From: Octopus sinensis
Lineage: Eukaryota
DNA: 64,000 nt
Assembly (NCBI RefSeq): GCF_006345805.1
Contig: NC_042999.1
Location: 122,698,001 to 122,762,000, forward strand
Reading direction: 5' to 3'
Shown: positions 1 to 60,539 of the stretch, piece by piece
How the letters are laid out: every line of letters begins with the position of its first letter
Position numbering within the stretch: position 1 is the first letter of the stretch
Position numbers and translations under genes: made by a program
The notes under the pieces: model-generated
What the model was told of the DNA's origin: nothing
The model's database searches: none
Seen by the model: the letters and a program-made list of their open reading frames with translations, nothing else

Positions 1-69
1 GGCGTGTGATTGAGTGGATTTCATCCAGATAGTTTTGGCCGAGGAGCTACAAGTGGGTTTTTTGTAAGT
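1..69 (+). other. candidate exon end and 5' splice donor (TTT|GTAAGT, intron would start at 64)
   Basis: GTAAGT at 64-69. The first ~200 bp contain several CpGs, unlike most of the window. No coding identity is visible. Confidence 0.3.
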
Positions 70-5003: not shown

Positions 5004-5256
5004 CATCATCATCATCATCATCATCACACACACATGTATATATACACATAAAGACACATGTGCATATATAATGTAATCTATTACAGATAAGCAAAATATT
5101 TCCTCAACTCCTTTGGAGGTGTCTTTTTCCTAATTGGCTTCAGTGATTTCAAATTCAAGGCATTGTAATCAAAACTATGGCCTCAGTAATTTTTTATCCA
5201 AAACTTACCCATTGCTCTAAGGGACTAGTACCATTTAGTAAGACTGGTCTACAATT

Positions 5257-6913
5257 CATCATCATCATCATCGTTTAGCGTCCGTTTTCCATGCTAGCAT
5301 GGGTTGGACGGTTCTACTGGGGTCTGTGAAGCCAGAAGGCTTCATCAGGCCCAGTCAAATCTGGCAGTGTTTCTACGGCTGGATGCCCTTCCTAACGCCA
5401 ACCACTCCGTGAGTGTAGTGGGTGCTTTTTACGTGCCACCTGCACAGGTGCCAGACAGAGCTGGCAAACGGCCACGAACGGATGGTGCTTTTTATGTGCC
5501 ACCGGCACGAGGGCCAGGCGAGGCTGGCAACGGACACGAAATGGGGCGGTGCTGGCAATGGTCGCGAAACGGAAGGTTCTCTTACATGCCACCGGCACTG
5601 GTAACACATCTGCAATTTCCATTGATCGATTTCGATTCTGATCCTCACTTGCCTCAACGGGTCTTCACAAGTAGAGTTTCGACATGCCACCGGCACTGGT
5701 AACACATCTGCAATTTCCATTGGTCGATTTCGATTCTGATCCTCACTTGCCTCAACAGGTCTTCACAAGTAGAGTTTTGTGTCCCAAGAAGGGAAGGTAT
5801 GCATACGTAGGCTGGCTCCATCCCATGTAGAAGGCCACGGGTTATGGACTCACTTGTCCTGCCGGGTCTTCTCGTGCACAGCACACTTCCAGAGGTCTCG
5901 GTCTCTAGTCATTTCCTCAGTGAAACCTAAAGTTCGAAGGTCGTGCTTCACCACCTCGTCCCAGGTTTTCCTGGGTCTGCCTCTTCCACAGGTTCCCTCA
6001 ACCGCTAGGGTGTGGCACTTTTTCACACAACTATCTTCATCCATTCTCGCCACATGACCATACCAGCGCAAACGTCTCTCTTGCACACCACAACTGATGC
6101 TTCTTAGGTCCAGCTTTTCTCTCAAGGTACTTACACTCTGCCAAGTATGAGTACTGACATTACACATCCATCGGAGCATACTGGCTTCATTTCTTGCGAG
6201 CTTATGCATATCCTCAGCAGTCACGGCCCATGTTTCACTGCCATGTAGCATGGCTGTTCGTACACACGCATCATACAGTCTGCCTTTCACTCTGTGCGAG
6301 AGGCCTTTTGTCACCAGCAGAGGTAAGAGCTCTCTGAACTTTGCCCAAGCTATTCTTACTCTAGCAGTTACACTTTCAGCACACCCGCCCCCGCTGCTGA
6401 CTTGGTCACCTAGGTAACGGAAACTATCAACTATTTCTAGTTTTTCTCCCTGGAAAGTGACGGAATTTGGTCTCAGAGCATTTTCAGTGTTTATTGTTCC
6501 TGAGCATCTGCCACATACAAAAACCATCTTCCTAGTTAGCCTTCCTTTGACATTGCTGCACCTCTTGTGTGTCCATAGCTTACACTTGGTGCATCTTATA
6601 GAGTTTCTACCTACACCTTTTCTACAGATCGAGCAGGGCCATCTACCTGAAGGTGTTTGTGATTTGTCTACCTTCCTACTGATTACGACTTTGGTTATAG
6701 CTAGATTGACTCTGAGGCCCTTCGATTCTAATCCTTGTTTCCACACCTGAAACTTCTCCTCCAGTTCTGATAGCGACTCAGCAATTAGAGCAAGGTCATC
6801 AGCATAGAGGAGCTCCCAAAGGCATCCTGTCTTGAATTCCTCCGTTATTGCCTGGAGGACTATGATAAATAGGAGGGGGCTGAGTACTGAGTACTGAGCC
6901 TTGGTGGACCCCT
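5257..6913 (-). mobile_element. RTE-clade LINE, 5'-truncated, young (copy 1)
   Basis: RT motifs GVHQGS, LLYADD and FRYLG; RTE C-terminus RLRWYGHV and RGRPRKTW; 3' UTR with an internal 98-bp tandem repeat; (ATG)n tail at 5257-5272. Near-identical to 48434-50544. Confidence 0.95.
5850..6887 (-). pseudogene. RTE reverse-transcriptase C-terminal half with inserted PHD-type finger (truncated ORF)
   Basis: The provided ORF 5850-6746 extends upstream in frame through WELLYADDLALIA to a 7-bp duplication near 6881-6894. The endonuclease and N-terminal RT are absent. Confidence 0.9.
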
Positions 6914-7016: not shown

Positions 7017-8176
7017 AGATGATTTTTTTTCTCATTTGTTTACAGTATGATTCCACATTCTGGCATATAGAATATGATTCTATATCCCAACACTTATTTG
7101 GTGTTCAGTTATTGTTTGAAACATTTCTAGATTGAAGTATTTTGTTGTTCATATTTTATTCAAATTCTAAATATTCTGTACAATTACTCAGCTGTTTTCT
7201 TGCCTATAACTGTCATGAACTTAGGAGCTTAACCCTTCCATTAGTTGTCAACATTTTTCTCTATACTGATTTAATCTCACAGCTCACAGCTATGTTTCTT
7301 TACTATAACAACATTGAGTTATTTAAATAAGCTGACTTTAAAAAACGTCTACATTCTGTTTTTAATTGTTACCTTCAGAAGCCTGTCAGCTATTACTTTG
7401 TTCCTTCCAGCATGGTATAGCATTTATATTGTAACACTGAAACTACAAATCTCAACTACATAATTAGTTATGATATTGTTGACGTTACATGAACTAATAT
7501 AAAGTCCTCATATGATAATTATGATGAATGTGTGATTTCTGTTTTTATTTTAATACAACTCAGAAAAATATTATGAAGTGTAGGTGTAGTGAATTAAGAT
7601 CTTTGCCAGATAACAATAAGACAAAATATATAATGCATTTGCAATTTTTCTGTGTTAATGTCTGTACCCCCTAAGGGAAAAGTTATCAGAAATGACTCAT
7701 TGGTTCATATTATTGGATTAAAATCTAGAGAAGTTTTATAGTATTTAAATCTGATTGCCTTTCCCTGGCTTGTTATCTGAGGAGATTTCATAACATGAGC
7801 ACTTAAAAATTTATTTATCAAAGCTTGATAGCATCTGCAACTTGATGGATAATTCTTAAAACTTAGAATGTGTATTCTTAATATTAGTAATTTGAAGCCC
7901 CAAGGCAGGTGTTTTCTTAAATAGAATTCTTTACCAGACTTGATGATTCTAGGTTAATATCTTAGACAGACTTTTTCAAAACGATTTTAATATCTAAAGC
8001 ATACAGAAAAAAATATACTACAATAAAAAAAATATGGCTATCATATGTTCCCAAATACAAAAATCATGGCTTTTAACCAAAAATAAATCATACATGATAA
8101 ATGGTTAATTTAGAAAATCTATGTTGGCTGTTGATTTGAAGAAATAATTAAAATCTTTTATGGGAAAAATTTGCTG

Positions 8177-8227
8177 CTAATATTTAATTAAATATATTCT
8201 CATATATTTCTTTCTTTTCAGGTAAGT
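8177..8227 (+). promoter_or_regulatory. juxtaposed 3' and 5' splice sites (candidate recursive-splicing ratchet point)
   Basis: CTAAT at 8177-8181, 13 uninterrupted pyrimidines at 8207-8219, AG at 8220-8221, then GTAAGT at 8222-8227. No other AG occurs between 8142 and 8219. Confidence 0.55.
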
Positions 8228-8727
8228 AAACATTTGCAGTTTGAAATATGATAAACCTGAATTGACATATGAACATGAAATCTAAGTTGTAAGTATTCCC
8301 ATAACATTGATGGCATTGCTTTAAAGTAAACATCATTTCACAACATTTATGTGTGTACGTATATTAGAAATTAGTAGTACAGTGAAGGTTGTAAAGTCTC
8401 AACTAATTTAGGAGAGAACATATTTACCTTGTACTGACAATAGAAATGATAATTTCATGTAATGAACTTTCAATGAATTGGTTAAAGTTTTATAAAGCTG
8501 TACACACACGTGTGTGTGTGTGTGTGTGTGTTAGATTTAGTTGTATTTGTCGCAGTGCTAACTTCATTTTCTGACACTGTTACCATGTTGGATATGTCAC
8601 TGTTATTGCTTCTATCACAATGTGCCTGCAGCAGGTGTTTTTCGTTTTGGTTGGTATTTCCTTTCTTGACTGATAGATAGATAGATAGATAGATAAATAT
8701 ACATGTATATATCTATCTGTCTGTGTC

Positions 8728-9056: not shown

Positions 9057-12000
9057 CTAGCACTATGACCCAGCAACACTAGTGCAGCTCAAGAACGGTG
9101 AGCTTGTGTCTGTTCTGTGGTTTTGGCTGCCCTTGCATTGGCCATGGCAGCAGCATCTCAAGAACAGCAGGCCTGTGTTTGTTCTGCAGTTTCGGCTGCT
9201 CTTGCATTGGCCATGGCAGTGGCATTCCAAGCTACTCGAGTAGCTCTGTCTTGGGGTGCCTTATTAGCCCTTCTGGCCCTCTTAGCCTCTGAATCAGCTG
9301 TCCTTCTTCCAATGCAGGCTCTCTTCTTTCAGAGCATTTTGGCAATTTATTGGTTTTTGTGGACTAAGTGAGATAATTTGGGACAACTGATAAGCACATG
9401 ATTTTAAGTAATGGCAAAGCAATAATCAAAACGATAATGACAGAAGTGGTACACAAATGGAAAACAAAGGGCTATTTAAAAATAGCAAAAAATCGTAGTC
9501 AGGTTTCAAGCACAAAAACTATTTACTGTGCTTGTAAGTTGGTGAAAACAAAAAGCGTTGGCTGCTCGAAAGAAGCAGTAGTCAAAAAGTGATATCAAAC
9601 ACAAAAACGTCTATTATTTTTACTCAAAAATTGATGCGGAACTACGAAAAATTCTCTAATTAATACTTTGGTTAATCAAAAGAAGCAGTAATCAAAACGT
9701 GAACTGATATCAAGCACAAAAAGGCTATTTTTACACAAAAAAATTGGGGTCAAACTGCAGCAGATGCTTTAAGTGTTAATTGATGAGTTGCTAGGCAAAA
9801 ATATGGCCAGGCAACCCAAATAAAAGTGATAGGTAAAGTGGAATTTTATGAACAAAACTTGAGGTTTGTAATGGAACCCAAGCCATGAAGCATAATTGTG
9901 AAAAGCGTTTGAGTCTGGGCACCAAAGCATGCATCCTCATGCTTAATTAGCGCACTGAATCTTATTGGATAATGATCTAGTATGCACAAATCCAAGGCCA
10001 CGCGTCCAAGGTCAAATGTTTACATGTCCCTCAGTAGCATTGGCCAGTACACACACGCACGCACGCATAAGCACACATGTTCAAGATCATATGCAGTGCC
10101 ATGCTCATGCACATACATGACTAAGTGTCTACACAGGAAAACGCTTTTTGTGGTGTTTCATGCATGAGGAAATTAATTAGTGGAAAGTGGATTCAAGTTT
10201 TAAAAAATTAGGGCATTTGGGAAGTGGAAAAACCCAATCAATTTGCAGTAGCAAACAAAGAGCTTATTATGTGTAAGTTAAGGCTAAAAGAACACGGTTG
10301 TAATTCAATTTGAATGGGGAAGCCTGTAAGGGATTGTTATGGGCAAACTCTAATCAAATTAAGATTTCACGCACCATAAGTAATAACCTGAGTACCTTTG
10401 TCACCTGCTATGTAGATAGCGAATGATTCGACCTCAGGCTGAATGCAAACTCAACAAACGATGGTTATGTGTATTTTCAAAATCATGCTGTGGTGCAGTC
10501 AAATTCGAGTCTTTCACTTTCTTCTTCCTCCCTTTTTGTCTGACTATGACATGTGCACAGTCCCGCTAACTGAAAGCTTCATATCATGTGCTTATTGTTC
10601 ATTTCTAGTGTTTCATAAAAAAGTTGTTACTTAATCAAGGTAGTGCAGAAACACCGTATGACTCATGAGTTCTAGCCTTGAATTGTCTTAGGTACTGGTG
10701 TGCTTCTGTTTGGTTAGCTATAAAATAGGTAAGAACAAAACTCAGGCTTTTTACAGATAAAGATTGCTTCATTTTGTGCAAAAATCTCTTTCTTTGTTTT
10801 CAGAAATTATGTTTGCCTTTCCATCACATATCTTTTATAAAGCGTTTGACTGAGCCTCTGCAGATTCTGAGCCCATCCCAGAGGTACAGCTGCACTGGGT
10901 AATTAATCATCGCAAATTTGGCAGCTTTGTTGAAGGTGAAGGGGGAGCATGTTAGAAAATCGATAAAGACCACCATGAAAGCAAGGCTTCACCAACAAAA
11001 TGAAATGAATAATGAGGGCTGACAAAGTTTTCAAATTTCCTAGCAAGTGGAAAAATGTGACTGGAAATTAATTAGCATCTCAATTTTCACTTGTATCTCA
11101 AAACACAAAAGAATGAAATTTTGCTTAAGAAAGTTTTTGTATCTTAAGTCATTCGTACCTCAAATTAGGGCTTAAAGAAAAGGTTACAGTCAATTTAAAT
11201 GCGGAAACCCACAAGGAATAGTTTTATTGAGTTTCCACTGATTGATTGGCAATTTTGGTAAACTTGAATCAAATTAAGATTTCTTGTACCAAAAGGATCA
11301 CCCTGATAACCCTATGCCCCTGTTGTGTAGGTAGCAAATGATTTGATCATAGGCTGAATGCAAACAAGTAAACGTTTTCTTATGAAAATCCCTTGGGTGG
11401 GGTCAACTTACCCATTTTTCATTTTTAATCCTACTTGAATAAAACATCCTGGGCTCTCGCTGGATAATTTAAATCAACCGAAAGCATAAAAGCAAAGCCC
11501 TTCCTTCCTAGATAGATTCATAGAATAGGCTCCAACTGCTTTTGTAGCATATTTAATAAATGATAGCATATCAAGCATATTTGGTCTTTCTTGAAAATCC
11601 CACTCTCTTGTCATTCACTTGGTCTAACTCGTTAATTATTCCCTGCATTTCTCAAATCAAAAACGCATGCACGTTTGAAAGCCAAAACACATGATAACGC
11701 ATCTTCGCAAAACACAAAAATGCACTGAGTCATAGAGACTGTCTGCAAATGCGCATGCGCATTCAACTATCAAGGACAAAATTATCACCATCCAATCGAA
11801 AAGCAGCTGGCAATCTATTGGCATATCTAGCTGTACGTACCACGTACAAATTTCTATGTTTTAGCGATTTTGAATGGATATGCCCATAACTTATGGGCAT
11901 AAGGGGTCGGTTTATCGATTTTTTTAATGGCTTTCTGGGGTGACTGGGAAAATGAAAAGATCTTCACAATCACCCTCAGACAGTTTTGAAAGCCCATACT

Positions 12001-19739: not shown

Positions 19740-20759
19740 AGATCTGATGATAAGCCATAAAGTTAAACCCTTTATGGACAAGAAACCCAGGGTAATCCCA
19801 TAAATCAGCTTTTGCCATGAAAAAAAATATATATATGGTTCAAAATTGTATAAAAAGCAAAAAGCAGAGACAGGTGAGGTAACTACAAACAAGACGTATT
19901 AGCTTCATGCTCAGGCAAAATGCAAGAGTCTTTGATGTTTCAAGCATATGCTCTTCTTCAGAAAGCAATGAGGTGAGAAAAGAGATGGTGAGATGGAGAA
20001 ATAAATTGGAGAGAGAAAAAAAACGTCTGGATTAGTGAGTGCACATGTTGAATTGACTGGAAGGAAATGATTGAAGAGAAGAGTGGTTAGAGAGATAACA
20101 GTAGCCTTGCTAAAAATGTGTGTGTGTGTATGTGCGCTGGAATGTGTGAGGCTATCAGATGTGTGTAAAAGGCAGTGGAACATATGTGTGTTTGTGCATA
20201 AAGTGTGTGTGTGTGACACTGTTGTGTGCTTGTTTATTATGTGTGTTTATGTGTGAATATTGTGTTTGAGTGCATGTATGTATGTGAGAATGCGTATCAG
20301 ATGGTGTGCTTAAATGGGACTATGGGATAAAGTGTTTATATATGGAGTTGATATGTATATGTACATTCTGTGTTTGTGCATGTGTAATTATGTGTAAGAG
20401 TGATTGTGTATGTGAGGCTATCTGACATATATGTGTGTTGTAGGGGAATCTATGGTAGTCTACTAGGATAGAAGCATGAGGTGAAATTGCAGTGACAGGA
20501 GGTAGGAACTGGGAGTGTGGGTATGTGACTATATACATGCTACAATATGTGGGAGAATGCTGATGCTGGTGTGTAGTGGGAAGGAGTGTGTGTGCATGTC
20601 CATGTGTATAGGTGTGTATATATATATATATATGCTGTAGTGGTATGGAGTGAGTACTGAGTATAATAGTGTAAAGAATGTGAGAAGTGTAGAGGAAGAG
20701 GAGTGGAAGGTGAGGTTTGTGTGGTCTGTGTAAGCATTTACACAGAAGCAGGTTTAAAT

Positions 20760-21500
20760 GAAGGGGAGCAATGGATTGAGACCATATGGGATTGAGGAAT
20801 GCAGAGAGAAAATAAATTCCTGTTCTCAATGGAGGTGGGAGTCTGGGTGACCTCTGTACAAGGCCAGTCCAAATGCAAATTGATGTTGTAGCAAGTGACT
20901 GGAGGAGCTGAAGTGATACAAGACTGAGATGTCATTGCCAAGTCTGATGTCTCAGAGATGTTCAGCAAACAGATAGCTAATTGCCAGCCAGTTTGACCAA
21001 TGTATAGAATATTACATAGAGAGCAGAGGATACAGTAGATTACACTGCTGGAGATGTAGGTGTATGAATCAGTGATGTGGAGGGGCAGTGCTAGATTCCA
21101 GAAAGGTGGGGTTAAGTGTGGAAGTGCAAGGAAAGGTGCGAGCAAGTAAGGAACCAGGTTGGATGCCAGGAATGGGGAAGAAACTATTGACTAGAAGGTC
21201 ACAAATGTTATGGGCACATTTGAAGGAGGGGTGGGTTGAAGAAGATATGGGAGATGTAAGTGTCAGGTCTGAATGGGCAGAAATCCTGAAGAATGGTCCG
21301 TTGAAGGAGTAGGATGGAGGGGTTGTGGGTGAGCAGGAAAGAGAGGCATATAAAGGTGAGATAGATATAGGGAGAGAGAGTAGATGCACAGTCAACAGAT
21401 CAGGCACATGTGAATGTGGTTGGGATAATAGTTGGGGTACTTCTTTTGGGTGAAATGGTGAGCCATGTGTTCAGACTGTCTTGAACCATGCCTTTGGGAA
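20760..21500 (-). mobile_element. Penelope-like element fragment encoding a decayed GIY-YIG endonuclease
   Basis: ITDSYTYISSSVIYCILCSLCNILYIGQTG in ORF 20738-21145, preceded by PGSLLARTFPC. Both match Penelope-type EN context. Confidence 0.75.
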
Positions 21501-39759: not shown

Positions 39760-41250
39760 TGCTTTTTTGAAACGAAACTTGGTCCATGGATTTATGAATT
39801 CATAGGATTGTGTAGTCAAAAGTTTGTGTATATATCTACTCTGTGAATTATGTGATGTCAAGAATATGTGTAATGCATATATTTTTGTGTAATGAGTTGG
39901 GGATGCAACTGTAGATAACTTTAACCATATTTCTATTGAAGATTTTGTGGTATTTGTGTTTGAAGGAAGTGGTTATTTTTGAGTTTTAGCAGTTTTCTAG
40001 CTGTTTAGTGGCTACTTCCATACTACATGGGAAATTCCATAAGATTTTTCTCTGCTTACTTCTTTTTGGTCTACATTCGGTTCAGCATAATTTATGCTGC
40101 TATTAAAGTTGGACCTTTCTAATGCAGTGATGAATTATGAGGCAGTTTTTCTGAAAGTAGCTTTATCAGCAGACAGGTTAGAAACATGCTTATATAAGGT
40201 ATCTTTATTTGGTTTATGGCAAGGCTTAAATTTGCCTTAAGTATTAATTCTAGTTCTTAGGTTCAATTGTCTACATGTTCAGCATAATTGCTTTCTTATC
40301 TTATCTATATCATGTCCATTTTTGTTATGTATCACTGCAAGATTGTTGTCAATATATAACCCTATATCTGCTTCTGTTACGTCTTTTCTAAGAACATCTG
40401 AGATATAAAGGCCAACCAGATCTGATATATCTGCACCATCATAGATCCCCATAGTGATATCAAATAGCTCATCACCCATTCTTTTCACCCAATAGGAATT
40501 GTCACAAAAAAGTAATGACTTCTTTGAATTCCTTGTTATGTCTATATCAGCATTAGTGACAGTTACATATGCTTTACTAAGCTCAAGTGCTTTTTGAAGC
40601 AGGATTTTGGAAACTGAGGGATAAAACTCCACAATATCAAACTGGATGAATTTGGATTTTGGTTTATCTTCAATTTTTTTGAACCATTCAATAGTTTCCC
40701 AGCTACATATCCATTCAGTAGAGTTTGAGGAGGCTCTGATGTGTCTTATGATGTTGTCTAATATAGATTTGCTAATAATACCTAGTTTGCTTTTCGAGGG
40801 ATTTATCAATCTGCAGCTAGTGTTTTGCATAAAATTGTCTTTGTAGTCTTCCAGGGTTACAAAATGTTTTTGTGGGGTGAGTCATTCTATTCTACTTTGA
40901 TTTAAAGTTTCATGGCCAAATTGTTTGCCTTAAAAATGATTAAATTATAAACGTTGGGGTTCAGTTTCTTATATGTTTTTGTAATGTTATCAACTAGCAG
41001 CTTGTTATATGTTTTATCTACTTTTATAAATGTGTTAAAAGTTTCAAGAAATGTTTGTAGTTTGTGTGGGAATCTTTTGGATTTATGGTTGAACTTGACA
41101 CTTTGAACTGATTTTATGAGGTCATCTTCAAATCCATCTAGATCTTTAATAGTGCAGTAGGTTTATGGAAGACCTAAAACCCCAACACCTCCAAACAAAG
41201 CAGGTCATACTTTTATCACAAAAGTAGGCTTCCCACTTCCTTCACTTCAG
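39760..41250 (-). pseudogene. Penelope-like element reverse transcriptase, decayed
   Basis: SCRLINPSKSKLG, FIQFDIVEFYPS, FDITMGIYDGAD and GLYIDN (catalytic DD damaged) in ORF 40279-40830, with HKIFNRNMVKVIYSCI downstream at about 39900-39950. Confidence 0.85.
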
Positions 41251-41339: not shown

Positions 41340-41588
41340 TTTCAAATTATGAAACTGACTTATTGGAAGTCCACCTGAAGATTGTCGATCAAGACAAGAA
41401 ACGATTGTAGTGGCGGTTTTTTTGACTATTTATTAAAATTTTATGTATTGATTAAGTCTTTCCTTGTTTGTTTTGCAAAATAGTGGTTTTGTCTCTAATA
41501 ATATTTTATAATATTTTACTATAAAATTGGATTTAATCCTAAATCTGATTTTTTTTCCTGTAAATTTGGATTTATTCCCTAATATTTA
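41340..41588 (+). mobile_element. Penelope pseudo-LTR, inverted relative to the adjacent RT
   Basis: Same family as 63101-63430; carries a hammerhead motif; abuts the 5' side of the minus-strand RT. Confidence 0.75.
41371..41413 (+). ncRNA. type I hammerhead ribozyme motif, intact core
   Basis: CCAC-CUGAAGA-UUGUC GAUCAA GACAA-GAAAC GAUU GUA^-GUGG. All three stems pair and the predicted cleavage is after 41409. Confidence 0.75.
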
Positions 41589-42870
<1,282 letters not shown>

Positions 42871-43154: not shown

Positions 43155-43537
43155 ATGGAAGCTAAGAAAGTTCCTTTTTGGCACTTGATGCTTTGGGAAC
43201 CAGACAAAAATTGCTGCAGCTCGACTGGGATGTATTACCCCACCTTCCATATTCACCAGATATTGTTCCTTCAGATTTCCACTTATTCAGGTCTATGCAG
43301 AATAGTCTTAATGGTAAGAATTTCAATTCCTTGGATGACGTAAAAAGATACCTTGATGAATTCTTTGCCATGAAACCACCTCAATTCTGGGAAGAGGGTA
43401 TTTTCAAGTTAAAGGAAAGATGGAGATGCATTGTGCAACAAAATGGTTAATATTTGGTTGATTAAAAATGTAATGGCAAGTATTTATTTACCTTTTTCTT
43501 TCCTTTAAAAATCGGCATGAATTTCTGGACAACCCAA
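43155..43537 (+). mobile_element. internally deleted mariner element
   Basis: The N-terminus MEAKKVPFWHLML joins directly to the C-terminal RQKLLQLDWDVLPHLPYSPDIVPSDFHLF...LKERWRCIVQQNG. The 3' TIR is ggcatgaatttctggacaacccaa|TA; no 5' TIR was found. Confidence 0.85.
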
Positions 43538-45965: not shown

Positions 45966-46826
45966 CCTTTCTAATATAGGCATAAGGCCTGAAATTTTGG
46001 GGGAATGGGTAGTTGATTACATCAACCCCAGTGATTCACTGGTACTTAATTTATCGACCCCCAAAAGGATGAAAGGCAAAGTTGACCTCAGTGGAATCTG
46101 AACTCAGAACGTAGTGACAGATGAGATGATGCTAAGCGTTTCACCACACATGCTAACGATTCTGCCAGCTTGCCTCCTTTCATTGAATATTTATAATGAT
46201 AATATTTCTTTCCAATTTTAGGCACAAAGCCAGCAGTTTTGAAGGGTAAGGACAAGTCTATGACATTGTCACAATATTTGACTGGTACTTTATTTTATAA
46301 ATCCTGAAAGAATAAACAGTTGAACATTGAGTTTGAGTTTAGAATGTAAAAACCCCAGAAGAAATGTCCCTATGCATTTTGTCCAATGCACTCATGATTG
46401 TGCCAGCTTGCTATCACCACCACCACCACTATCACTACCACAACAACAATAATAATTGTAATCCTTCCTACAAAAGGTACAAGGCCTGAAATTTGGTGGG
46501 AGGAGACAAGTTGGTTACATCGACCTTAGTGTTTTACTGGTACTTAATTTGTTCACTCTGAATTTGAACTCAGAACATAAAGACAGACGAAATGTTGATA
46601 AGCATTTTTCCTAGCATGCTAACGATTTTGCCAGCTCACCACCTTAATGATAATAATAATCATAATAATTCTTTCTACTGAAGACACAAGACCTAAAATT
46701 TGACACAAGACCTAAAATTACACCAACTCCAGTATTTCACTAGTACTTAATTTATCAACTCCGAAAGGATGAAAGGCAAAATCAACCACAGCAGAATTTG
46801 AACTTAGAACATAGCGATGAGCAAAA
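45966..46826 (-). mobile_element. stack of four head-to-tail family B SINEs
   Basis: Copies at about 45966-46177, 46207-46412, 46463-46643 and 46670-46826 (truncated), each preceded by an (AAT)n-type tract. Confidence 0.85.
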
Positions 46827-47665
46827 TTCTTATACTTTCTCCCTTCTCAGAGCACATCTTACACTGTGGTGAGTGAGTGCCTTTATCAATGTGAAATTTG
46901 GAGTAGCTTGTCCTAAAAGCTTGTTCTTGAGCGCTGTATACACTAATGCCTCAGTGGACCCTTTTAAGTCTCCTTTCTGCAGCCATTGCCAGGTTCTATT
47001 CCAATGAATCTCATCTTAATTCTTCAAGAACTGACTGTGCATTTTCTTGTCTTACCAAATTTTCTTCATCTGCTCTCTCTGGCCTTTCTTAAATTGTGTT
47101 GGATCTACAGCTTCGTTCACTTTTAAGGTTCCCTGCATTTCCACTGCTTCAATCATTTCTTCTTTACTTCTCTTGATATACCAAGCTAAGCTATTCTCCT
47201 CTTCCCTTACACAACCTTCACAACACATTAATCCCCATCCTCCTTCTTTTCTCTTTACATACAATCTTGACACATCATTCTTTGGGTGTAGTCCCTCTTT
47301 TCATTGTCATTAATTTATATGTTCTCCAGTCTATCTCTTGTAATTCATGCTTCTTCCAAGATAATATTCCTGCCCCATATCTCATCAAAGCAACAGCCCA
47401 CGTGTTAATTGCTCTAATCTTATAGTGGCTATTTAGCTTTGATTGGAGCACAAGCTGAGTTCTCCTCAAATACTTTCCTGTACATTTCTTTCATCTTGTG
47501 TTCATTCATCTTATCTCTTTCAATGATATCCAAGCATTTATATCCTTCCTCTCTGACTTCCTCTATAGTTTCATCACTTTCCAGCTTGATCCCATAGCTT
47601 TTACTGATTTTCCCCATTTTGAGAGTCATTACACCACATTTCTCGATCTTAAATTTCATGCCAAT
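46826..47665 (-). mobile_element. R4/Dong-type LINE fragment, decayed
   Basis: KIRAINTWAVALMRYGAG, RLYVKRKEGGWGL, WLQKGDLK and CKMCSEKGESI. The 5' end abuts (TAA)n on the element strand. Confidence 0.85.
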
Positions 47666-47731
47666 ATTATTGTTATTATTATTGTTATTATTATTATTAT
47701 TATTGTTGTTTGTTGTTGTTGTTGCTGTTGC

Positions 47732-47762
<31 letters not shown>

Positions 47763-47770
47763 ATTATTAT
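47666..47770. repeat. (TTA)n-(TTG)n-(CTG)n compound trinucleotide repeat
   Basis: Directly visible. Confidence 0.95.
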
Positions 47771-48433
47771 ACCACCACCTTTGTGGCACTAGTTCCAGCT
47801 CTTTATATTCAGAGCTCAAATCCTGCCATTGTCAATTTTGCATTTCATTTTTTTTTTTTGTGGACAATAAAATGAAATGTCATCAAGTGCTAGAGTTAAT
47901 TTAATTGACTTGTCATTATCATTAATATTATTGATGATGTCATTCATTTGTGAAACTCAAGGTATCATCATTATATCTCCAATTTATTCATTTCTATTTC
48001 ATAAATGTTTAAGAAAAAGGGTGAGTGAAATAAATGACTTGATCATAACTATTTCTTCATTTAGAAAAATTTCTTATATATAGCCACGAAACAGGTGTCA
48101 TTATTCTACCAAAGTATTTCAAGATATTTTTATGAAATTTTGGTAAATATATGTCAAAATGAGATGTCACTGTTATTTTCATTTTTGCGTAATTTAGATG
48201 ACAATTTATTCACTGCACCCTGTATATATATATATTAAATACTGTATATTATAAACTTATAATTCATCACAATTCAAATATCAGCATATTACCTCTATTG
48301 AAAATATGCTATAACTAATTCTTGAATGAGCTATGTTAGGTGTGTAGATGTTATTAAATATATATTTATTGCTTATATTTTGCTTCTAACTGTATTGTAT
48401 ATTTATCTTATGATTATGCTGTACATGTACTGT

Positions 48434-50544
48434 CATCATCATCATCATCATCATTTAGCGTCCGTTTTCCATGCTAGCATGGGTTGGACGGTTCTACTGG
48501 GGTCTGTGAAGCCAGAAGGCTTCATCAGGCCCAGTCAAATCTGGCAGTGTTTCTACGGCTGGATGCCCTTCCTAACGCCAACCACTCCGTGAGTGTAGTG
48601 GTGCTTTTTACGTGCCACCCGCACTGGTGCCAGACAGAGCTGGCAAACGCCCCGAACGGATGGTGCTTTTTATGTGCCACCGGCACGAGGGCCAGGCGAG
48701 GCTGGCAACGGACACGAAACGGGGCGGTGCTGGCAACGGTCGCGAAACGGAAAGTTCTCTTACATGCCACCGGCACTGGTAACACATCTGCAATTTCCAT
48801 TGATCGATTTCCATTGATCGATTTCGATTCTGATCCTCACTTGCCTCAATGGGTCTTCACAAGCAGAGTTTCGACATGCCACCGGCACTGGTAGCACATC
48901 CGCAATTTCCATTGATCGATTTCGATTCTGATCCTCACTTGCCTCAACACGTCTTCACAAGTAGAGTTTTGTGTCCAAGAAGGGAAGGTATGCATACGTA
49001 GGCTGGCTCCATCCCATGTAGAAGGCCACGGGTTGTGGACTCACTTGTCCTGCCGGGTCTTCTCGCGCACAGCACACTTCCAGAGGTCTTGGTCTCTAGT
49101 CATTTCCTCAGTGAGACCTAAAGTTCGAAGGTCGTGCTTCACCACCTCGTCCCAGGTTTTCCTGGGTCTGCCTCTTCCACAGGTTCCCTCAACCGCTAGG
49201 GTGTGGCACTTTTTCACACAACTATCTTCATCCATTCTCGCCACATGACCATACCAGCGCAAACGTCTCTCTTGCACACCACAACTGATGCTTCTTAGGT
49301 TCAGCTTTTCTCTCAAGGTACTTACACTCTGCCGAGTGTGAGTACCGGCATTACACATCCATCGGAGCATACTGGCTTCATTTCTAGCGAGCTTATGCAT
49401 ATCCTCAGCAGTCACGGCCCATGTTTCACTGCCATGTAGCATGGCTGTTTGTACACACGCATCATACAGTCTGCCTTTCACTCTGTGCGAGAGGCCTTTT
49501 GTCACCAGCAGAGGTAAGAGCTCTCTGAACTTTGCCCAAGCTATTCTTACTCTAGCAGTTACACTTTCAGCTCACCCGCCCCCGCTGCTGACTTGGTCAC
49601 CTAGGTAACGGAAACTATCAACTATTTCTAGTTTTTCTCCCTGGAAAGTGACGGAAGTTGGTCTCAGAGTATTTTCAGTGTTTATTGTTCCTGAGCATCT
49701 GCCACATACAAAAACCATCTTCCTAGTTAGCCTTCCTTTGACATTGCTGCATCTCTTATGTGTCCATAGCTTACACTTGTGCATCTTATAAGTTTCTACC
49801 TACACCTTTTCTACAGATCGAGCAGGGCCATCTACCTGAAGGTGTTTGTGATTTGTCTACCTTCCTACTGATTACGACTTTGGTTTTAGCTAGATTGACT
49901 CTGAGGCCCTTCGATTCTAATCCTTGTTTCCACACCTGAAACTTCTCCTCCAGTTCTGATAGCGACTCAGCAATTAGAGCAAGGTCATCAGCATAGAGGA
50001 GCTCCCAAGGGCATCCTGTCTTGAATTCCTCCGTTATTGCCTGGAGGACTAAGATAAATAGGAGGGGGCTGAGTACTGAGCCTTGGTGGACCCCTACCTC
50101 TACCCGGAATTCTTCACTGTACTCATTTCCAACCCTCACCCTACTAGCGGCGTCCCTATACATGGCCCGCACAGCTCTCACTAACCATTCATCTATCCCT
50201 AGTTTTCTCATTGCCCACCAGATAAGGGATCGGGGGACCCTGTCGAAGGCTTTCTCCATGTCACAAAAAGCCAGGTACAGGGGCTTATCTTTGGCTAGGT
50301 ATTTCTCCTGCAGCTGCCTTACCAGGAATATAGCATCAGTAGTACTTTTCCCTGGCACAACCCAAACTGCATCTCATCTAAACTAACTCTCTCTCTAATT
50401 AGTTGGGCTATGACCCTCTCCGTAACCTTCATCACCTGGTCCAACAGCTTGATACCTCTGTAGTTATTTGTATCTAGGGCATCACCTTTACCTTTGTAGC
50501 AGTTGACTATTATACTGCTACACCAGTCATTGGGTATGACCCCT
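48434..50544 (-). mobile_element. RTE-clade LINE, 5'-truncated, young (copy 2), frameshifted
   Basis: NYRGIKLL, MQFG/GKSTTDAIF, DMEKAFDRV, GVHQGSVLSPLLF, YADD and RLRWYGHV motifs; several 1-bp deletions split the ORF; (ATG)n tail at 48434. Confidence 0.95.
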
Positions 50545-54988: not shown

Positions 54989-55562
54989 CCTCACAGAGGC
55001 AATGACAAGTGACTGAGCCCTTTGGAAATATGCTGTGTTGAAGACCTGTGGAACCAAGTGAAATCATAGTTGTGGCTAATGCCAGTGCTGCCTGACTGGC
55101 AGCCATGCTAGTGATATGTAACAAGCATCATTCAAGCATGAATGATTCTAGTGCCGCCTGACTGGCACTCATGTTGGTGGCATGTAAAAATCACCATTCA
55201 AGCATGGCCAATGCCAGTGCTACCTGACTGGCTCCCATGCTGGTGACATGTAAAAAGCACCCACTACACTCACAGAGTGGTTGGCTTTAGGAAGGGCATC
55301 CAGCTGTAAAAACCTTGCCAAATCAGATTGGAGCCTGATGCAACCTTTCAGCTTGCCATTCCTCAATCAAATTGTCCAACCCATGCCAACATGGAAAGCA
55401 GTTGTTAAACAACGATGATGATGATGTATGTATGCATATTACTGTATCATCATCCAAATCAGATTGGAACCTGGTGCAGTCTCCTGGCTTGCCAGTTCTC
55501 AGTTCAGCTATCTAACCCATGCCAGCATAGTAAGCAGACGTTAAACATCAATGATGATGATG
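54980..55562 (+). mobile_element. older RTE-related 3' UTR or RTE-tailed SINE with internal repeats and a duplicated tail
   Basis: 55240-55425 matches the reverse complement of the RTE 3' end (aaaagcacccactacactcac.gagtggttggc.ttaggaagggcatccagc...gatgatg). It has three gccagtgc.gcctgactggc units and a second tail at 55453-55562. Confidence 0.75.
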
Positions 55563-55660
55563 TATGTTTGTTTGTATGTATATTACAGAATCATCATACA
55601 TCACAAAACTTACTGAATGAAAAAGGTTATACTCATTGATATGTCTTAGACGACATGCTG

Positions 55661-59259: not shown

Positions 59260-60539
59260 TCAGGTCATCCCATAAGTTCTGTCTGATTTTCCCTTTTTTA
59301 AATTGAATGAAATTTAATAGTATTTTAGAATGTCTAATGGAAAAAAAAAAATTTATGCATTTGTGTACATTTAAACTAATTAAATATTATTTTACAGAAT
59401 AATAGAATTAAAATTTCTTTGATTAAAACCCTTTCTAACATGGAAGTATCCAAAGAGCATTTAAGGCTCATAATGCTTTATGAGTACATAAAAGGAAACT
59501 CTGCAACTGAAGCAATTCGAAACACACAGTTTATTGGAAAGAATGCTTGAATGAAAGAACTTGCAGAAAATGGTTTGCAAAATTCAAAAGTGGAGATTTC
59601 AGCCTTGAAAATGAAGATTGGACAGGACGTCCAGTTGAGTTTGATGATAAGCTCCTTGAGGAATTACTTCAAGAAAATCCTGCATTATCAGTTGAAGAAT
59701 TGGCAATAAAGCTTAGTTCAAACCATACAACTGTTCACATGTCATCTTCAACAACTTGGAAAGGTTCCTAAACTTGGAAACTGGGTGCCTCATGAATTGT
59801 CCGAAAGCAACTGCAAATCCCGAGTTGACATCTACTCTTCCCTCCATTTCCATAAACTCATTTCGCCCTTTTTGGACAGACTTGTGACTGGTGACGAAAA
59901 ATGGATCTTCTATCGAAATGTTAAATGTCATAAACAGTGGCTTAGTAAAAGGGAAAAGGCTCAGCCACAACCGAGAAGGGAACTTCATGGAAAAAAGGTT
60001 CTTCTCTCTATCTGGTGGGATTACAAATGAGTGATTCACTTTGAATTGTTACCACCTAATGCAACAATCAATGCTCAAGTCTACTTTCAGCAATTAGAGT
60101 TTTTGAACCAAGCTTTGAAGAAAAAAGACCCGCTTTAGTGAATCAAAAAGCAGTGATGTTTCATCAGGACAATGCACGACCCCATACGGCAAAGATCACA
60201 TCACAGAAGATCGAAGAGCTTCGTTGGGAAAAAATTGCTCATCCACCTTATTGTCCCAACCTTGCTTCTTCAGACTACCATTTGTTTTGTAGTTTACAGA
60301 ATCATTTAGAGAACATAACTTTCGCAAGCCAGGAGGTGGTTGAAACTGACATTTCAGAGTTCTTTGCATTGAAGCCAAAAGAGTTTTACATTGATAGGAT
60401 TAAAAAGCTTGTAAATAGATGGAAGGAAGTCATAGATAATCAGGAAAAGTACATTGATGATTAAATTTCAATTAAATATAACATTTGACCACTTGTTTTC
60501 TTTATTCAAAATTCGTACAGAACTTATGGGATGACCTGA
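59260..60539 (+). mobile_element. full-length mariner (Tc1/mariner, DD34D) element, 1280 bp
   Basis: Perfect 23-bp TIR core TCAGGTCATCCCATAAGTTCTGT at both ends, with TA at 59258-59259 and 60540-60541. Confidence 0.95.
59440..60464 (+). pseudogene. mariner transposase pseudogene
   Basis: MEVSKEHLRLIML, WFAKFKSGDF, WVPHEL, VTGDEKW, HQDNARPH...34 aa...SSDYHLF. Frameshifts and an internal TGA at 60028-60030 disrupt it. Confidence 0.93.

What the first reader, a model, noticed from the sequence alone, without database searches (positions are those of the whole stretch)
8142..8227. Textbook recursive-splicing (zero-length exon) signature AG|GTAAGT in unique sequence
Seen: a complete 3' splice site (CTAAT branch-like motif at 8177, a 78-nt AG-free zone, 13 consecutive pyrimidines, CAG) is followed with no gap by a perfect GTAAGT donor, and it lies in non-repetitive DNA. 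Established: such ratchet points let Drosophila and vertebrate genes remove very long introns in pieces. Inference: this window may be one huge + strand intron (candidate donor at 64) processed recursively. I am not aware of this being described in cephalopods.
Basis: partly seen in the sequence, partly recalled or inferred. Interest (0 to 1): 0.72.

Follow-up and report, generated by a model that had tools for sequence, protein, structure and literature searches.

The report
Unverified recursive-splice-site look-alike in octopod DNA
A stretch of probable octopus DNA matches the "ratchet point" signal that flies and vertebrates use to cut very long introns out in pieces, but nothing available here shows the site is transcribed, conserved or used, so it is a candidate and not a discovery.

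Summary
It is the only AGGTAAGT on either strand and ranks first of 361 AG|GT sites in the window.

Two further features of fly ratchet points are present. TT sits at -5/-6, and a second GTAAGT lies 67 nt downstream, bounding a possible out-of-frame cryptic RS-exon.

A motif this strict is expected about 0.01 times per 64 kb, so it is unusual for one window. It would still occur a few hundred times by chance in a genome of about 2.5 Gb.

The interpretation cannot be tested with these tools. No RNA data, annotation or orthologous cephalopod sequence was reachable. The proposed donor at 64 is TTT|GTAAGT, one of 27 composition-level hexamers, behind sequence closed in all frames. No coding exon was found on either strand, and no second RS-like site lies in the remaining 56 kb. 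Strand-skew hints for + transcription are weak.

My estimates: unused chance match about 0.55, real recursive site about 0.30, ordinary cassette or poison exon acceptor about 0.10. Recursive splicing in cephalopods does appear undescribed, but this single motif does not establish it. Interest is low to moderate.

The parts
8142..8219 (+). AG-free (AG exclusion) zone upstream of the acceptor, 78 nt
   Evidence: The previous AG is at 8140-8141. Only 4 of 37 pyrimidine-rich AGs in the window have an AG-free zone of at least 78 nt.
8177..8181 (+). CTAAT branch-point-like motif (A at 8180 = -42). Other candidates are TTTAAT 8183-8188 (A at 8187 = -35) and CTCAT 8199-8203 (A at 8202 = -20).
   Evidence: Read directly from the sequence. 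Fly recursive branch points lie mostly at -36 to -21 (Duff et al.). 8187 therefore fits better than 8180. None is tested.
8207..8219 (+). Polypyrimidine tract TTTCTTTCTTTTC, with TT at -5/-6
   Evidence: a 13-Y run, 17/20 Y. TT at -5/-6 is present in 99.5% of fly ratchet points.
8219..8221 (+). CAG acceptor
8222..8227 (+). GTAAGT, a consensus donor abutting the acceptor (the putative ratchet point is 8221|8222)
   Evidence: It is the only AGGTAAGT in the window on either strand and ranks 1 of 361 AG|GT sites.
8222..8288 (+). Putative cryptic RS-exon, 67 nt, out of frame, with stops in all three frames
   Evidence: Translation. Fly ratchet points need a short (about 50 nt), usually out-of-frame cryptic exon (Joseph & Lai 2021).
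8289..8294 (+). Second GTAAGT (context GTT|GTAAGTATT), a possible donor for the cryptic RS-exon
   Evidence: A GTRAGT falls 30-120 nt downstream of only about 3% of simulated sites. The + strand density in the window gives about 6%.
64..69 (+).
   Evidence: It is preceded by TTT. Bases 1-63 have stops in all frames and no ATG. It is one of 27 + strand GTAAGT hexamers, which is the level composition predicts.

Best explanation
The most likely single reading is a fortuitous juxtaposition. A short T/C-rich tract ending in CAG, next to a GTAAGT hexamer, sits in AT-rich (24% GC locally), transposon-laden, non-coding octopod DNA. It is not used by the spliceosome because it is intergenic, antisense to any transcript, or ignored inside an intron.

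Shown: the motif exists and is about a 1-in-100-windows event.

Inferred: at genome scale such events number in the hundreds. Without evidence of transcription, conservation or an enclosing intron, chance copies probably outnumber functional ones.
For: - The expected frequency of the strict motif is about 0.01 per 64 kb. That gives about 400 per 2.5 Gb genome (genome size from my own knowledge).
- The pyrimidine tract looks like a degenerate (TTTC)n microrepeat in a window full of simple repeats.
- There are 557 AGs with at least 14/20 upstream Y and 47 GTAAGT hexamers in the window, so the raw material is abundant.
- No coding exon was detected on either strand among the ORFs searched, so no gene context is established.
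- The proposed upstream donor at 64 has no exon features.
- No second RS-like site lies in the 56 kb downstream. Fly recursive segments average about 18 kb and reach at most 63.6 kb.
- No Rfam or tRNA feature indicates a host transcript.
Against: - The match is perfect on every position that defines fly ratchet points, including TT at -5/-6.
- It is the clear outlier among the 361 AG|GT sites.
- It has a long AG-free zone.
- It is followed at +67 nt by another GTAAGT, as the cryptic RS-exon model requires. Strict motif plus downstream donor is expected only about 4e-4 times per window.
- Strand skews and antisense LINE orientation are in the direction expected for + strand transcription.
Confidence: 0.55

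Rival explanations
1. It is a genuine recursive splice site (ratchet point) inside a long + strand intron.

Proposed mechanism:
1. The 3' splice site is recognised: a branch point around 8187-8202, the Y-tract, and CAG at 8221. Exon definition across the 67-nt cryptic RS-exon (8222-8288) and its donor at 8289 would help.
2. The upstream exon is ligated to 8222. This regenerates a strong donor (exon|GTAAGT).
3. That donor outcompetes the one at 8289 and is used to remove the rest of the intron.
4. Nothing from this site remains in the mRNA.
For: - All sequence-level hallmarks are met: juxtaposed consensus 3'/5' splice sites, a strong Y-tract with TT at -5/-6, and an AG-free zone.
- A downstream cryptic out-of-frame exon with its own donor is present.
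- The site is rare by chance in a single window.
- It lies in non-repetitive DNA.
- Weak + strand transcription hints exist.
- In flies, recursive sites occur in most introns longer than 40 kb (Pai et al.), so long-intron invertebrates plausibly use them.
Against: - There is no evidence of transcription, of an enclosing intron, or of conservation.
- The suggested donor at 64 is not credible.
- There is no other RS-like site in 56 kb downstream.
- The two donors share an identical GTAAGT core, so dominance of the ratchet-point donor is not assured.
- Cephalopod genomes resemble vertebrate genomes in size and intron length (my own knowledge). Only nine fully suppressed intronic ratchet points were noted definitively in mammals.
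- Chance copies of the motif are expected in the hundreds per genome.
Confidence: 0.3
2. It is the ordinary acceptor of a small expressed non-coding, UTR or poison cassette exon (for example 8222-8288). That exon merely happens to begin with GTAAGT. This corresponds to an 'expressed RS-exon' in vertebrate terminology, and the exon is included in at least some transcripts.
For: - A 67-nt segment is flanked by a strong acceptor and a GTAAGT donor.
- It has stops in all frames and a length not divisible by 3, as in poison or UTR exons.
- Mammalian genomes may harbour more than 6,400 expressed RS-exons but very few pure zero-nt sites.
Against: - There is no transcript evidence.
- With an upstream exon ending in a typical ..AG, the regenerated donor at 8222 should be at least as strong as GTT|GTAAGT at 8289. 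That would favour skipping.
- The gene-context objections to the recursive-site reading apply here too.
Confidence: 0.1
3. The motif belongs to an unrecognised dispersed repeat (a SINE, MITE or old transposon remnant). Its consensus happens to carry the sequence, so many copies exist genome-wide.
For: The window is rich in transposon fragments and simple repeats. Genome-wide copy number could not be examined.
Against: - There is no second copy of 7050-8480 inside the 64 kb window.
- No terminal or inverted repeats lie around it.
- It is not part of the neighbouring LINE copy, whose homology ends at 6913.
- There is no match in the metagenome contig collection.
Confidence: 0.05

Closest known systems
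Drosophila zero-nucleotide-exon ratchet points (Ubx, kuz, Bx, luna and others; Burnette 2005, Duff 2015, Pai 2018, Joseph & Lai 2018/2021)
   Same: - (Y)n-NCAG|GTAAGT with TT at -5/-6.
- A plausible branch point at about -35.
- A short out-of-frame cryptic exon followed by a second donor.
- Location in non-coding DNA.
   Different: - Fly sites are defined by RNA evidence (junction reads, sawtooth, lariats) and by ultraconservation. They lie in introns of 11-133 kb of known genes. None of that is known here.
- The taxon is a lophotrochozoan whose genome is roughly 15-20 times the size of the fly genome (my own figures for both). The motif alone is therefore far less predictive.
Vertebrate recursive splice sites and RS-exons in long neuronal genes (Sibley 2015; Blazquez 2018)
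   Same: An AG|GTAAG motif with a downstream donor that defines an RS-exon. The genomic context has very long non-coding stretches.
   Different: In vertebrates most RS-exons are expressed or annotated exons, and only a handful of fully suppressed intronic sites are documented. Here no gene, expression or conservation data exist.
Cryptic or pseudo splice sites and pseudoexons in long introns and intergenic DNA
   Same: Consensus-quality splice motifs that arise by chance in AT-rich, repeat-rich sequence and are normally unused.
   Different: The exact abutment of two perfect sites, plus a second donor at +67 nt, is rarer than typical pseudoexons (about 4e-4 per 64 kb).

Membership tests
Recursive splice site / ratchet point (zero-nt exon type) | Juxtaposed consensus 3' and 5' splice sites around AG|GT | tested here: met
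   TTTCTTTCTTTTCAG|GTAAGT at 8207-8227. It ranks 1 of 361 AG|GT sites.
Recursive splice site / ratchet point (zero-nt exon type) | Prominent pyrimidine tract with TT at -5/-6 (99.5% of fly ratchet points) | tested here: met
   Positions 8216-8217 are TT, and 17/20 upstream bases are Y. The criterion comes from Duff et al..
Recursive splice site / ratchet point (zero-nt exon type) | Short cryptic RS-exon (about 50 nt, usually out of frame) with its own downstream donor | tested here: met
   8222-8288 is 67 nt with stops in all frames, and GTAAGT follows at 8289. The criterion comes from Joseph & Lai. This is sequence-level only.
Recursive splice site / ratchet point (zero-nt exon type) | Ratchet-point donor stronger than the RS-exon donor | tested here: inconclusive
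   Both have the GTAAGT core. The strength of the regenerated donor depends on the unknown upstream exon end. The downstream donor has a poor exon side (GTT|).
Recursive splice site / ratchet point (zero-nt exon type) | Lies in the sense orientation within a long intron (over about 11 kb in flies) of a transcribed gene | tested here: inconclusive
   - No exon was found on either strand among the ORFs searched.
- The source contig and its annotation were not retrievable.
- Only weak strand-skew hints exist.
- The donor at 64 is not credible.
Recursive splice site / ratchet point (zero-nt exon type) | Evolutionary conservation of the motif above its flanks | not testable with these tools
   - No cephalopod genome collection is available.
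- ORFs flanking the site have no relatives in the protein collection.
- The only cephalopod-like locus retrieved (L001) is an unrelated, diverged transposon copy.
- The exact-pattern scan of metagenome contigs found nothing.
Recursive splice site / ratchet point (zero-nt exon type) | RNA evidence: exon-to-ratchet-point junction reads, sawtooth read density, recursive lariats | not testable with these tools

The most novel reading that the evidence does not exclude
This is a functional ratchet point in a very long octopod intron. It would be the first documented case of recursive splicing in a cephalopod, or in any lophotrochozoan. It would imply that exon-definition-assisted stepwise intron removal is either ancestral to bilaterians or evolved repeatedly wherever introns became very long.
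Probability: 0.3. Interest if true: 0.55.

Novelty: not a real feature. Interest (0 to 1): 0.28.

Why it matters
If real, it would extend recursive splicing from flies and vertebrates to cephalopods. Their genomes have very long introns and large nervous-system genes. It would also give a concrete site to test whether the cryptic RS-exon mechanism is shared.

I found no paper in the searchable library linking recursive splicing to octopus or molluscs, so the gap is real.

One motif in one window cannot establish the phenomenon. The useful step is the genome-wide test it suggests: an excess of the strict motif in sense over antisense orientation in long introns, combined with total RNA-seq. As it stands, this is an ordinary candidate that a motif scan of any large AT-rich genome would produce by the hundred.

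Tried and rejected
1. Retrieving the source contig and annotation. Exact look-up of four window ORFs (76, 183, 298 and 190 aa) found nothing on record.

2. Finding orthologous DNA through ORFs flanking the site. 18 ORFs from 7131-8571, concatenated, gave no protein hit.

3. Exon discovery.
- All low-complexity-masked ORFs of at least 45 aa in 1-16 kb gave no hit.
- All ORFs of at least 30 aa with GC of 0.40 or more across the window gave no hit.
- A Pfam scan of ORFs of at least 45 aa in 16-44 kb gave no family.
- Not covered: ORFs shorter than 45 aa with GC below 0.40, and AT-rich ORFs of 44-64 kb for Pfam.

4. Positive control. The reverse-transcriptase ORF finds 51,742 relatives. The nearest named ones are from Octopus bimaculoides and Argonauta hians. 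The collection therefore does hold cephalopod proteins and the negatives are meaningful.

5. A cephalopod-like ENA contig (L001) reached through a reverse-transcriptase relative is only 67% identical at the transposon and shares nothing else with the window. It is useless for conservation.

6. An exact 26-nt pattern scan of JGI metagenome contigs gave 0 matches.

7. Rfam and tRNA scans, run to find an intron-hosted RNA that would give the strand of a host gene, found nothing.

8. The first Markov simulation timed out. It was rewritten and completed.

9. Rejected readings.
- A coding exon ending at 8221 or starting at 8222: stops in all frames on both sides.
- Part of the adjacent LINE: homology ends at 6913.
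- Any - strand feature at the site: only short chance ORFs.

Full report
**Observation**

The sequence is exactly as described.
- The last AG upstream is at 8140-8141.
- 8142-8219 is free of AG (78 nt).
- CTAAT is at 8177-8181.
- TTTCTTTCTTTTC at 8207-8219 is 13 pyrimidines.
- CAG at 8219-8221 is followed directly by GTAAGT at 8222-8227.
- 17 of the 20 bases before the AG are pyrimidines.

It is the only AGGTAAGT on either strand of the window. It is the top-ranked of 361 AG|GT sites by a clear margin. The flanking 7050-8480 has no other copy in the window and no terminal or inverted repeats. It is not part of the neighbouring LINE copy, whose homology with its sister copy ends at 6913.

**Is it more than chance?**

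- GTAAGT alone is not unusual: 27 on + and 20 on -, against roughly 23 expected from base composition.
- The window has 37 AGs preceded by at least 17/20 pyrimidines. The window's own Markov statistics give P(GTAAGT after ..CAG) = 1.7-3.3e-4. That predicts about 0.01 strict sites per 64 kb, both strands together.
- Simulating 30 Mb gave 0 (order 3) and 0.013 (order 5) per 64 kb.
- A looser definition (at least 14/20 Y, GTRAGT) gives 0.18-0.47 per window.
- The strict site is therefore about a 1% event for a single window. Octopus genomes are about 2.3-2.8 Gb (my knowledge). That implies roughly 400 chance copies per genome, most of them outside sense-strand introns.

**Extra features I checked against the literature**

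- Duff et al. report TT at -5/-6 in 99.5% of 197 fly ratchet points, and branch points mostly at -36 to -21. Here -5/-6 are TT.
TTTAAT (A at 8187, -35) fits the fly range better. CTCAT (A at 8202, -20) is another candidate.
- Joseph & Lai show that fly ratchet points require a short (about 50 nt), usually out-of-frame cryptic RS-exon with its own donor. Here a second GTAAGT lies at 8289-8294, giving a 67-nt segment (8222-8288) with stops in all frames.
- A GTRAGT 30-120 nt downstream occurs at about 3% of simulated sites and about 6% by the window's own + strand density. This is a modest independent point in favour, with a likelihood ratio of roughly 3-7 by my estimate.
- This check was made after seeing the site, and the second donor has a poor exon side (GTT|).

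**Context**

The window is probably from an octopod.
- Its LINE reverse-transcriptase ORF has its nearest named relatives in Octopus bimaculoides (86% over 71 aa) and Argonauta hians (77%).
- The window is 32% GC and dense in (TA)n and other simple repeats.

Recognisable content is all transposon-derived.
- Two 96.5%-identical LINE 3' parts lie on the - strand, at 5256-6913 and 48436-50095.
- Mariner/Mos1-type fragments lie on the + strand at 59.5-60.5 kb.

No non-transposon ORF matched any protein or Pfam family.
- ORFs next to the site gave nothing.
- All ORFs of at least 45 aa in 1-16 kb gave nothing.
- All ORFs with GC of at least 0.40 in the whole window gave nothing.
- ORFs of at least 45 aa in 16-44 kb gave no Pfam family.
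- The reverse-transcriptase positive control shows the collection contains cephalopod proteins.

The window therefore has no detectable coding exon on either strand. That is compatible with a giant intron and equally with intergenic DNA. Short or AT-rich exons would have been missed.

**The proposed intron**

- The 'donor at 64' is TTT|GTAAGT. Bases 1-63 are closed in all three frames and contain no ATG. At best it could be a non-coding first exon, and nothing supports even that.
- There is no other AG|GTRAG site with a pyrimidine tract anywhere in the remaining 56 kb on either strand.
- Fly recursive segments average 18 kb and reach at most 63.6 kb. This is a mild negative.

Weak positives for + strand transcription:
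- T>A (2.9%) and G>C (2.4%) on the + strand, the sign seen on mammalian sense strands.
- AATAAA 83 on + versus 130 on -, largely explained by the T/A skew.
- Both Pfam-confirmed LINE reverse-transcriptase fragments lie antisense to +.

All of these are confounded by repeats and vary by block. Rfam and tRNA scans found no hosted RNA that could give a strand.

**What could not be done**

No RNA-seq, no annotation and no cephalopod genome collection are available.
- Attempts to reach the source contig failed.
- Attempts to reach orthologous DNA failed.

Conservation and usage, the two defining properties of real recursive sites, are therefore untested.

**Weighing**

Cephalopods may use recursive splicing as flies do; recursive sites occur in most fly introns longer than 40 kb. 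In that case a strict motif inside a sense intron would usually be real. They may instead resemble vertebrates, where only nine fully suppressed intronic ratchet points were noted definitively. In that case chance copies dominate.

I combined five things:
- a prior leaning towards the vertebrate-like regime;
- the roughly 20-30% chance that a random site is in a sense-strand intron;
- the downstream-donor bonus;
- the lack of gene context;
- the weak strand hints.

This gives:
- real recursive site, about 0.30;
- unused chance match, about 0.55;
- ordinary cassette, poison or UTR exon acceptor, about 0.10;
- unrecognised repeat, about 0.05.

These figures are judgement, not computation.

**Comparison and novelty**

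At the sequence level the site meets every testable criterion of a fly-type ratchet point. The criteria that actually define membership are untested: a long sense intron, conservation and RNA intermediates.

I found no paper in the library connecting recursive splicing with octopus or molluscs. One paper contains both 'recursive splicing' and 'cephalopod', each occurring once and neither in the title or abstract.

If real, it would be a new member of a known kind in a new phylum. That would be interesting but not surprising to specialists. As evidence stands, it is a motif-level candidate of the sort any scan of a large AT-rich genome yields in the hundreds. I score it low to moderate.

Noticed in passing
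window 5256-6913 and 48436-50095 (both on the - strand): Two copies of the 3' part of one LINE are 96.5% identical over 1672 nt. Each carries RVT_1 and a PHD-like zinc finger, followed by a SINE-like GC-rich tail with 63-98-nt internal tandem repeats. This points to a young, recently active family. The nearest named relatives are in Octopus bimaculoides and Argonauta hians.
   Followed up: partly
window 41582-42867: A (TA)n microsatellite about 1.3 kb long (about 650 units, 81% matches). Dozens of shorter TA, TATC and TGTA arrays are scattered through the window.
   Followed up: no
window 59511-60461 (+) and 43166-43447 (+): Frameshifted Mos1/mariner-type transposase fragments at 59.5-60.5 kb (HTH_48, Transposase_1 and DDE_3 hits). 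The 43.2-kb ORF looks mariner-like by eye but had no Pfam hit. These are dead copies.
   Followed up: partly
window 20300-21500: A block with strong G-over-C skew (GC skew 0.50 on +) has long overlapping ORFs in all three - strand frames (203, 150 and 133 aa; P/S/T/H/L-rich). None has a protein or Pfam match. It is probably stop-poor C/T-rich non-coding sequence, but it is unexplained.
   Followed up: partly
window 40279-41162 (-): ORFs of 183-200 aa and 86 aa whose sequence looks transposon-like to me (e.g. 'FIQFDIVEFYPSV') have no Pfam hit and no exact record. They may be remnants of an unclassified retroelement.
   Followed up: partly
window 46807-47788 (-): A series of ORFs that look to me like the C-terminal region of another LINE. 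No Pfam family reached its threshold. If they are LINE-derived, every LINE-like piece in the window is on the - strand.
   Followed up: partly
whole window: Strand asymmetries: T>A and G>C on the + strand; AATAAA 83 (+) versus 130 (-); GTGAGT 21 (+) versus 6 (-); AG|GT with a pyrimidine tract 18 (+) versus 8 (-). The direction fits + strand transcription, but the asymmetries vary by block and are confounded by repeats.
   Followed up: partly
L001 (ENA ERZ25084522, contig ctg57916, 118.9 kb): A record in the tool's ENA collection (described there as metagenome assemblies) carries a contig with a related LINE (67% nt identity) and prokaryote-style ORF calls. This shows the protein collection holds DNA with related elements, and random ORFs called as 'genes', under non-obvious labels.
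   Followed up: partly
window 55078-55567 and 9084-9219: GC-rich tandem duplications (66-nt x2.8, 136-nt x1.8, 69-nt x2). Their translations resemble the SINE-like tail of the LINE copies. They are probably further fragments of the same repeat family.
   Followed up: no
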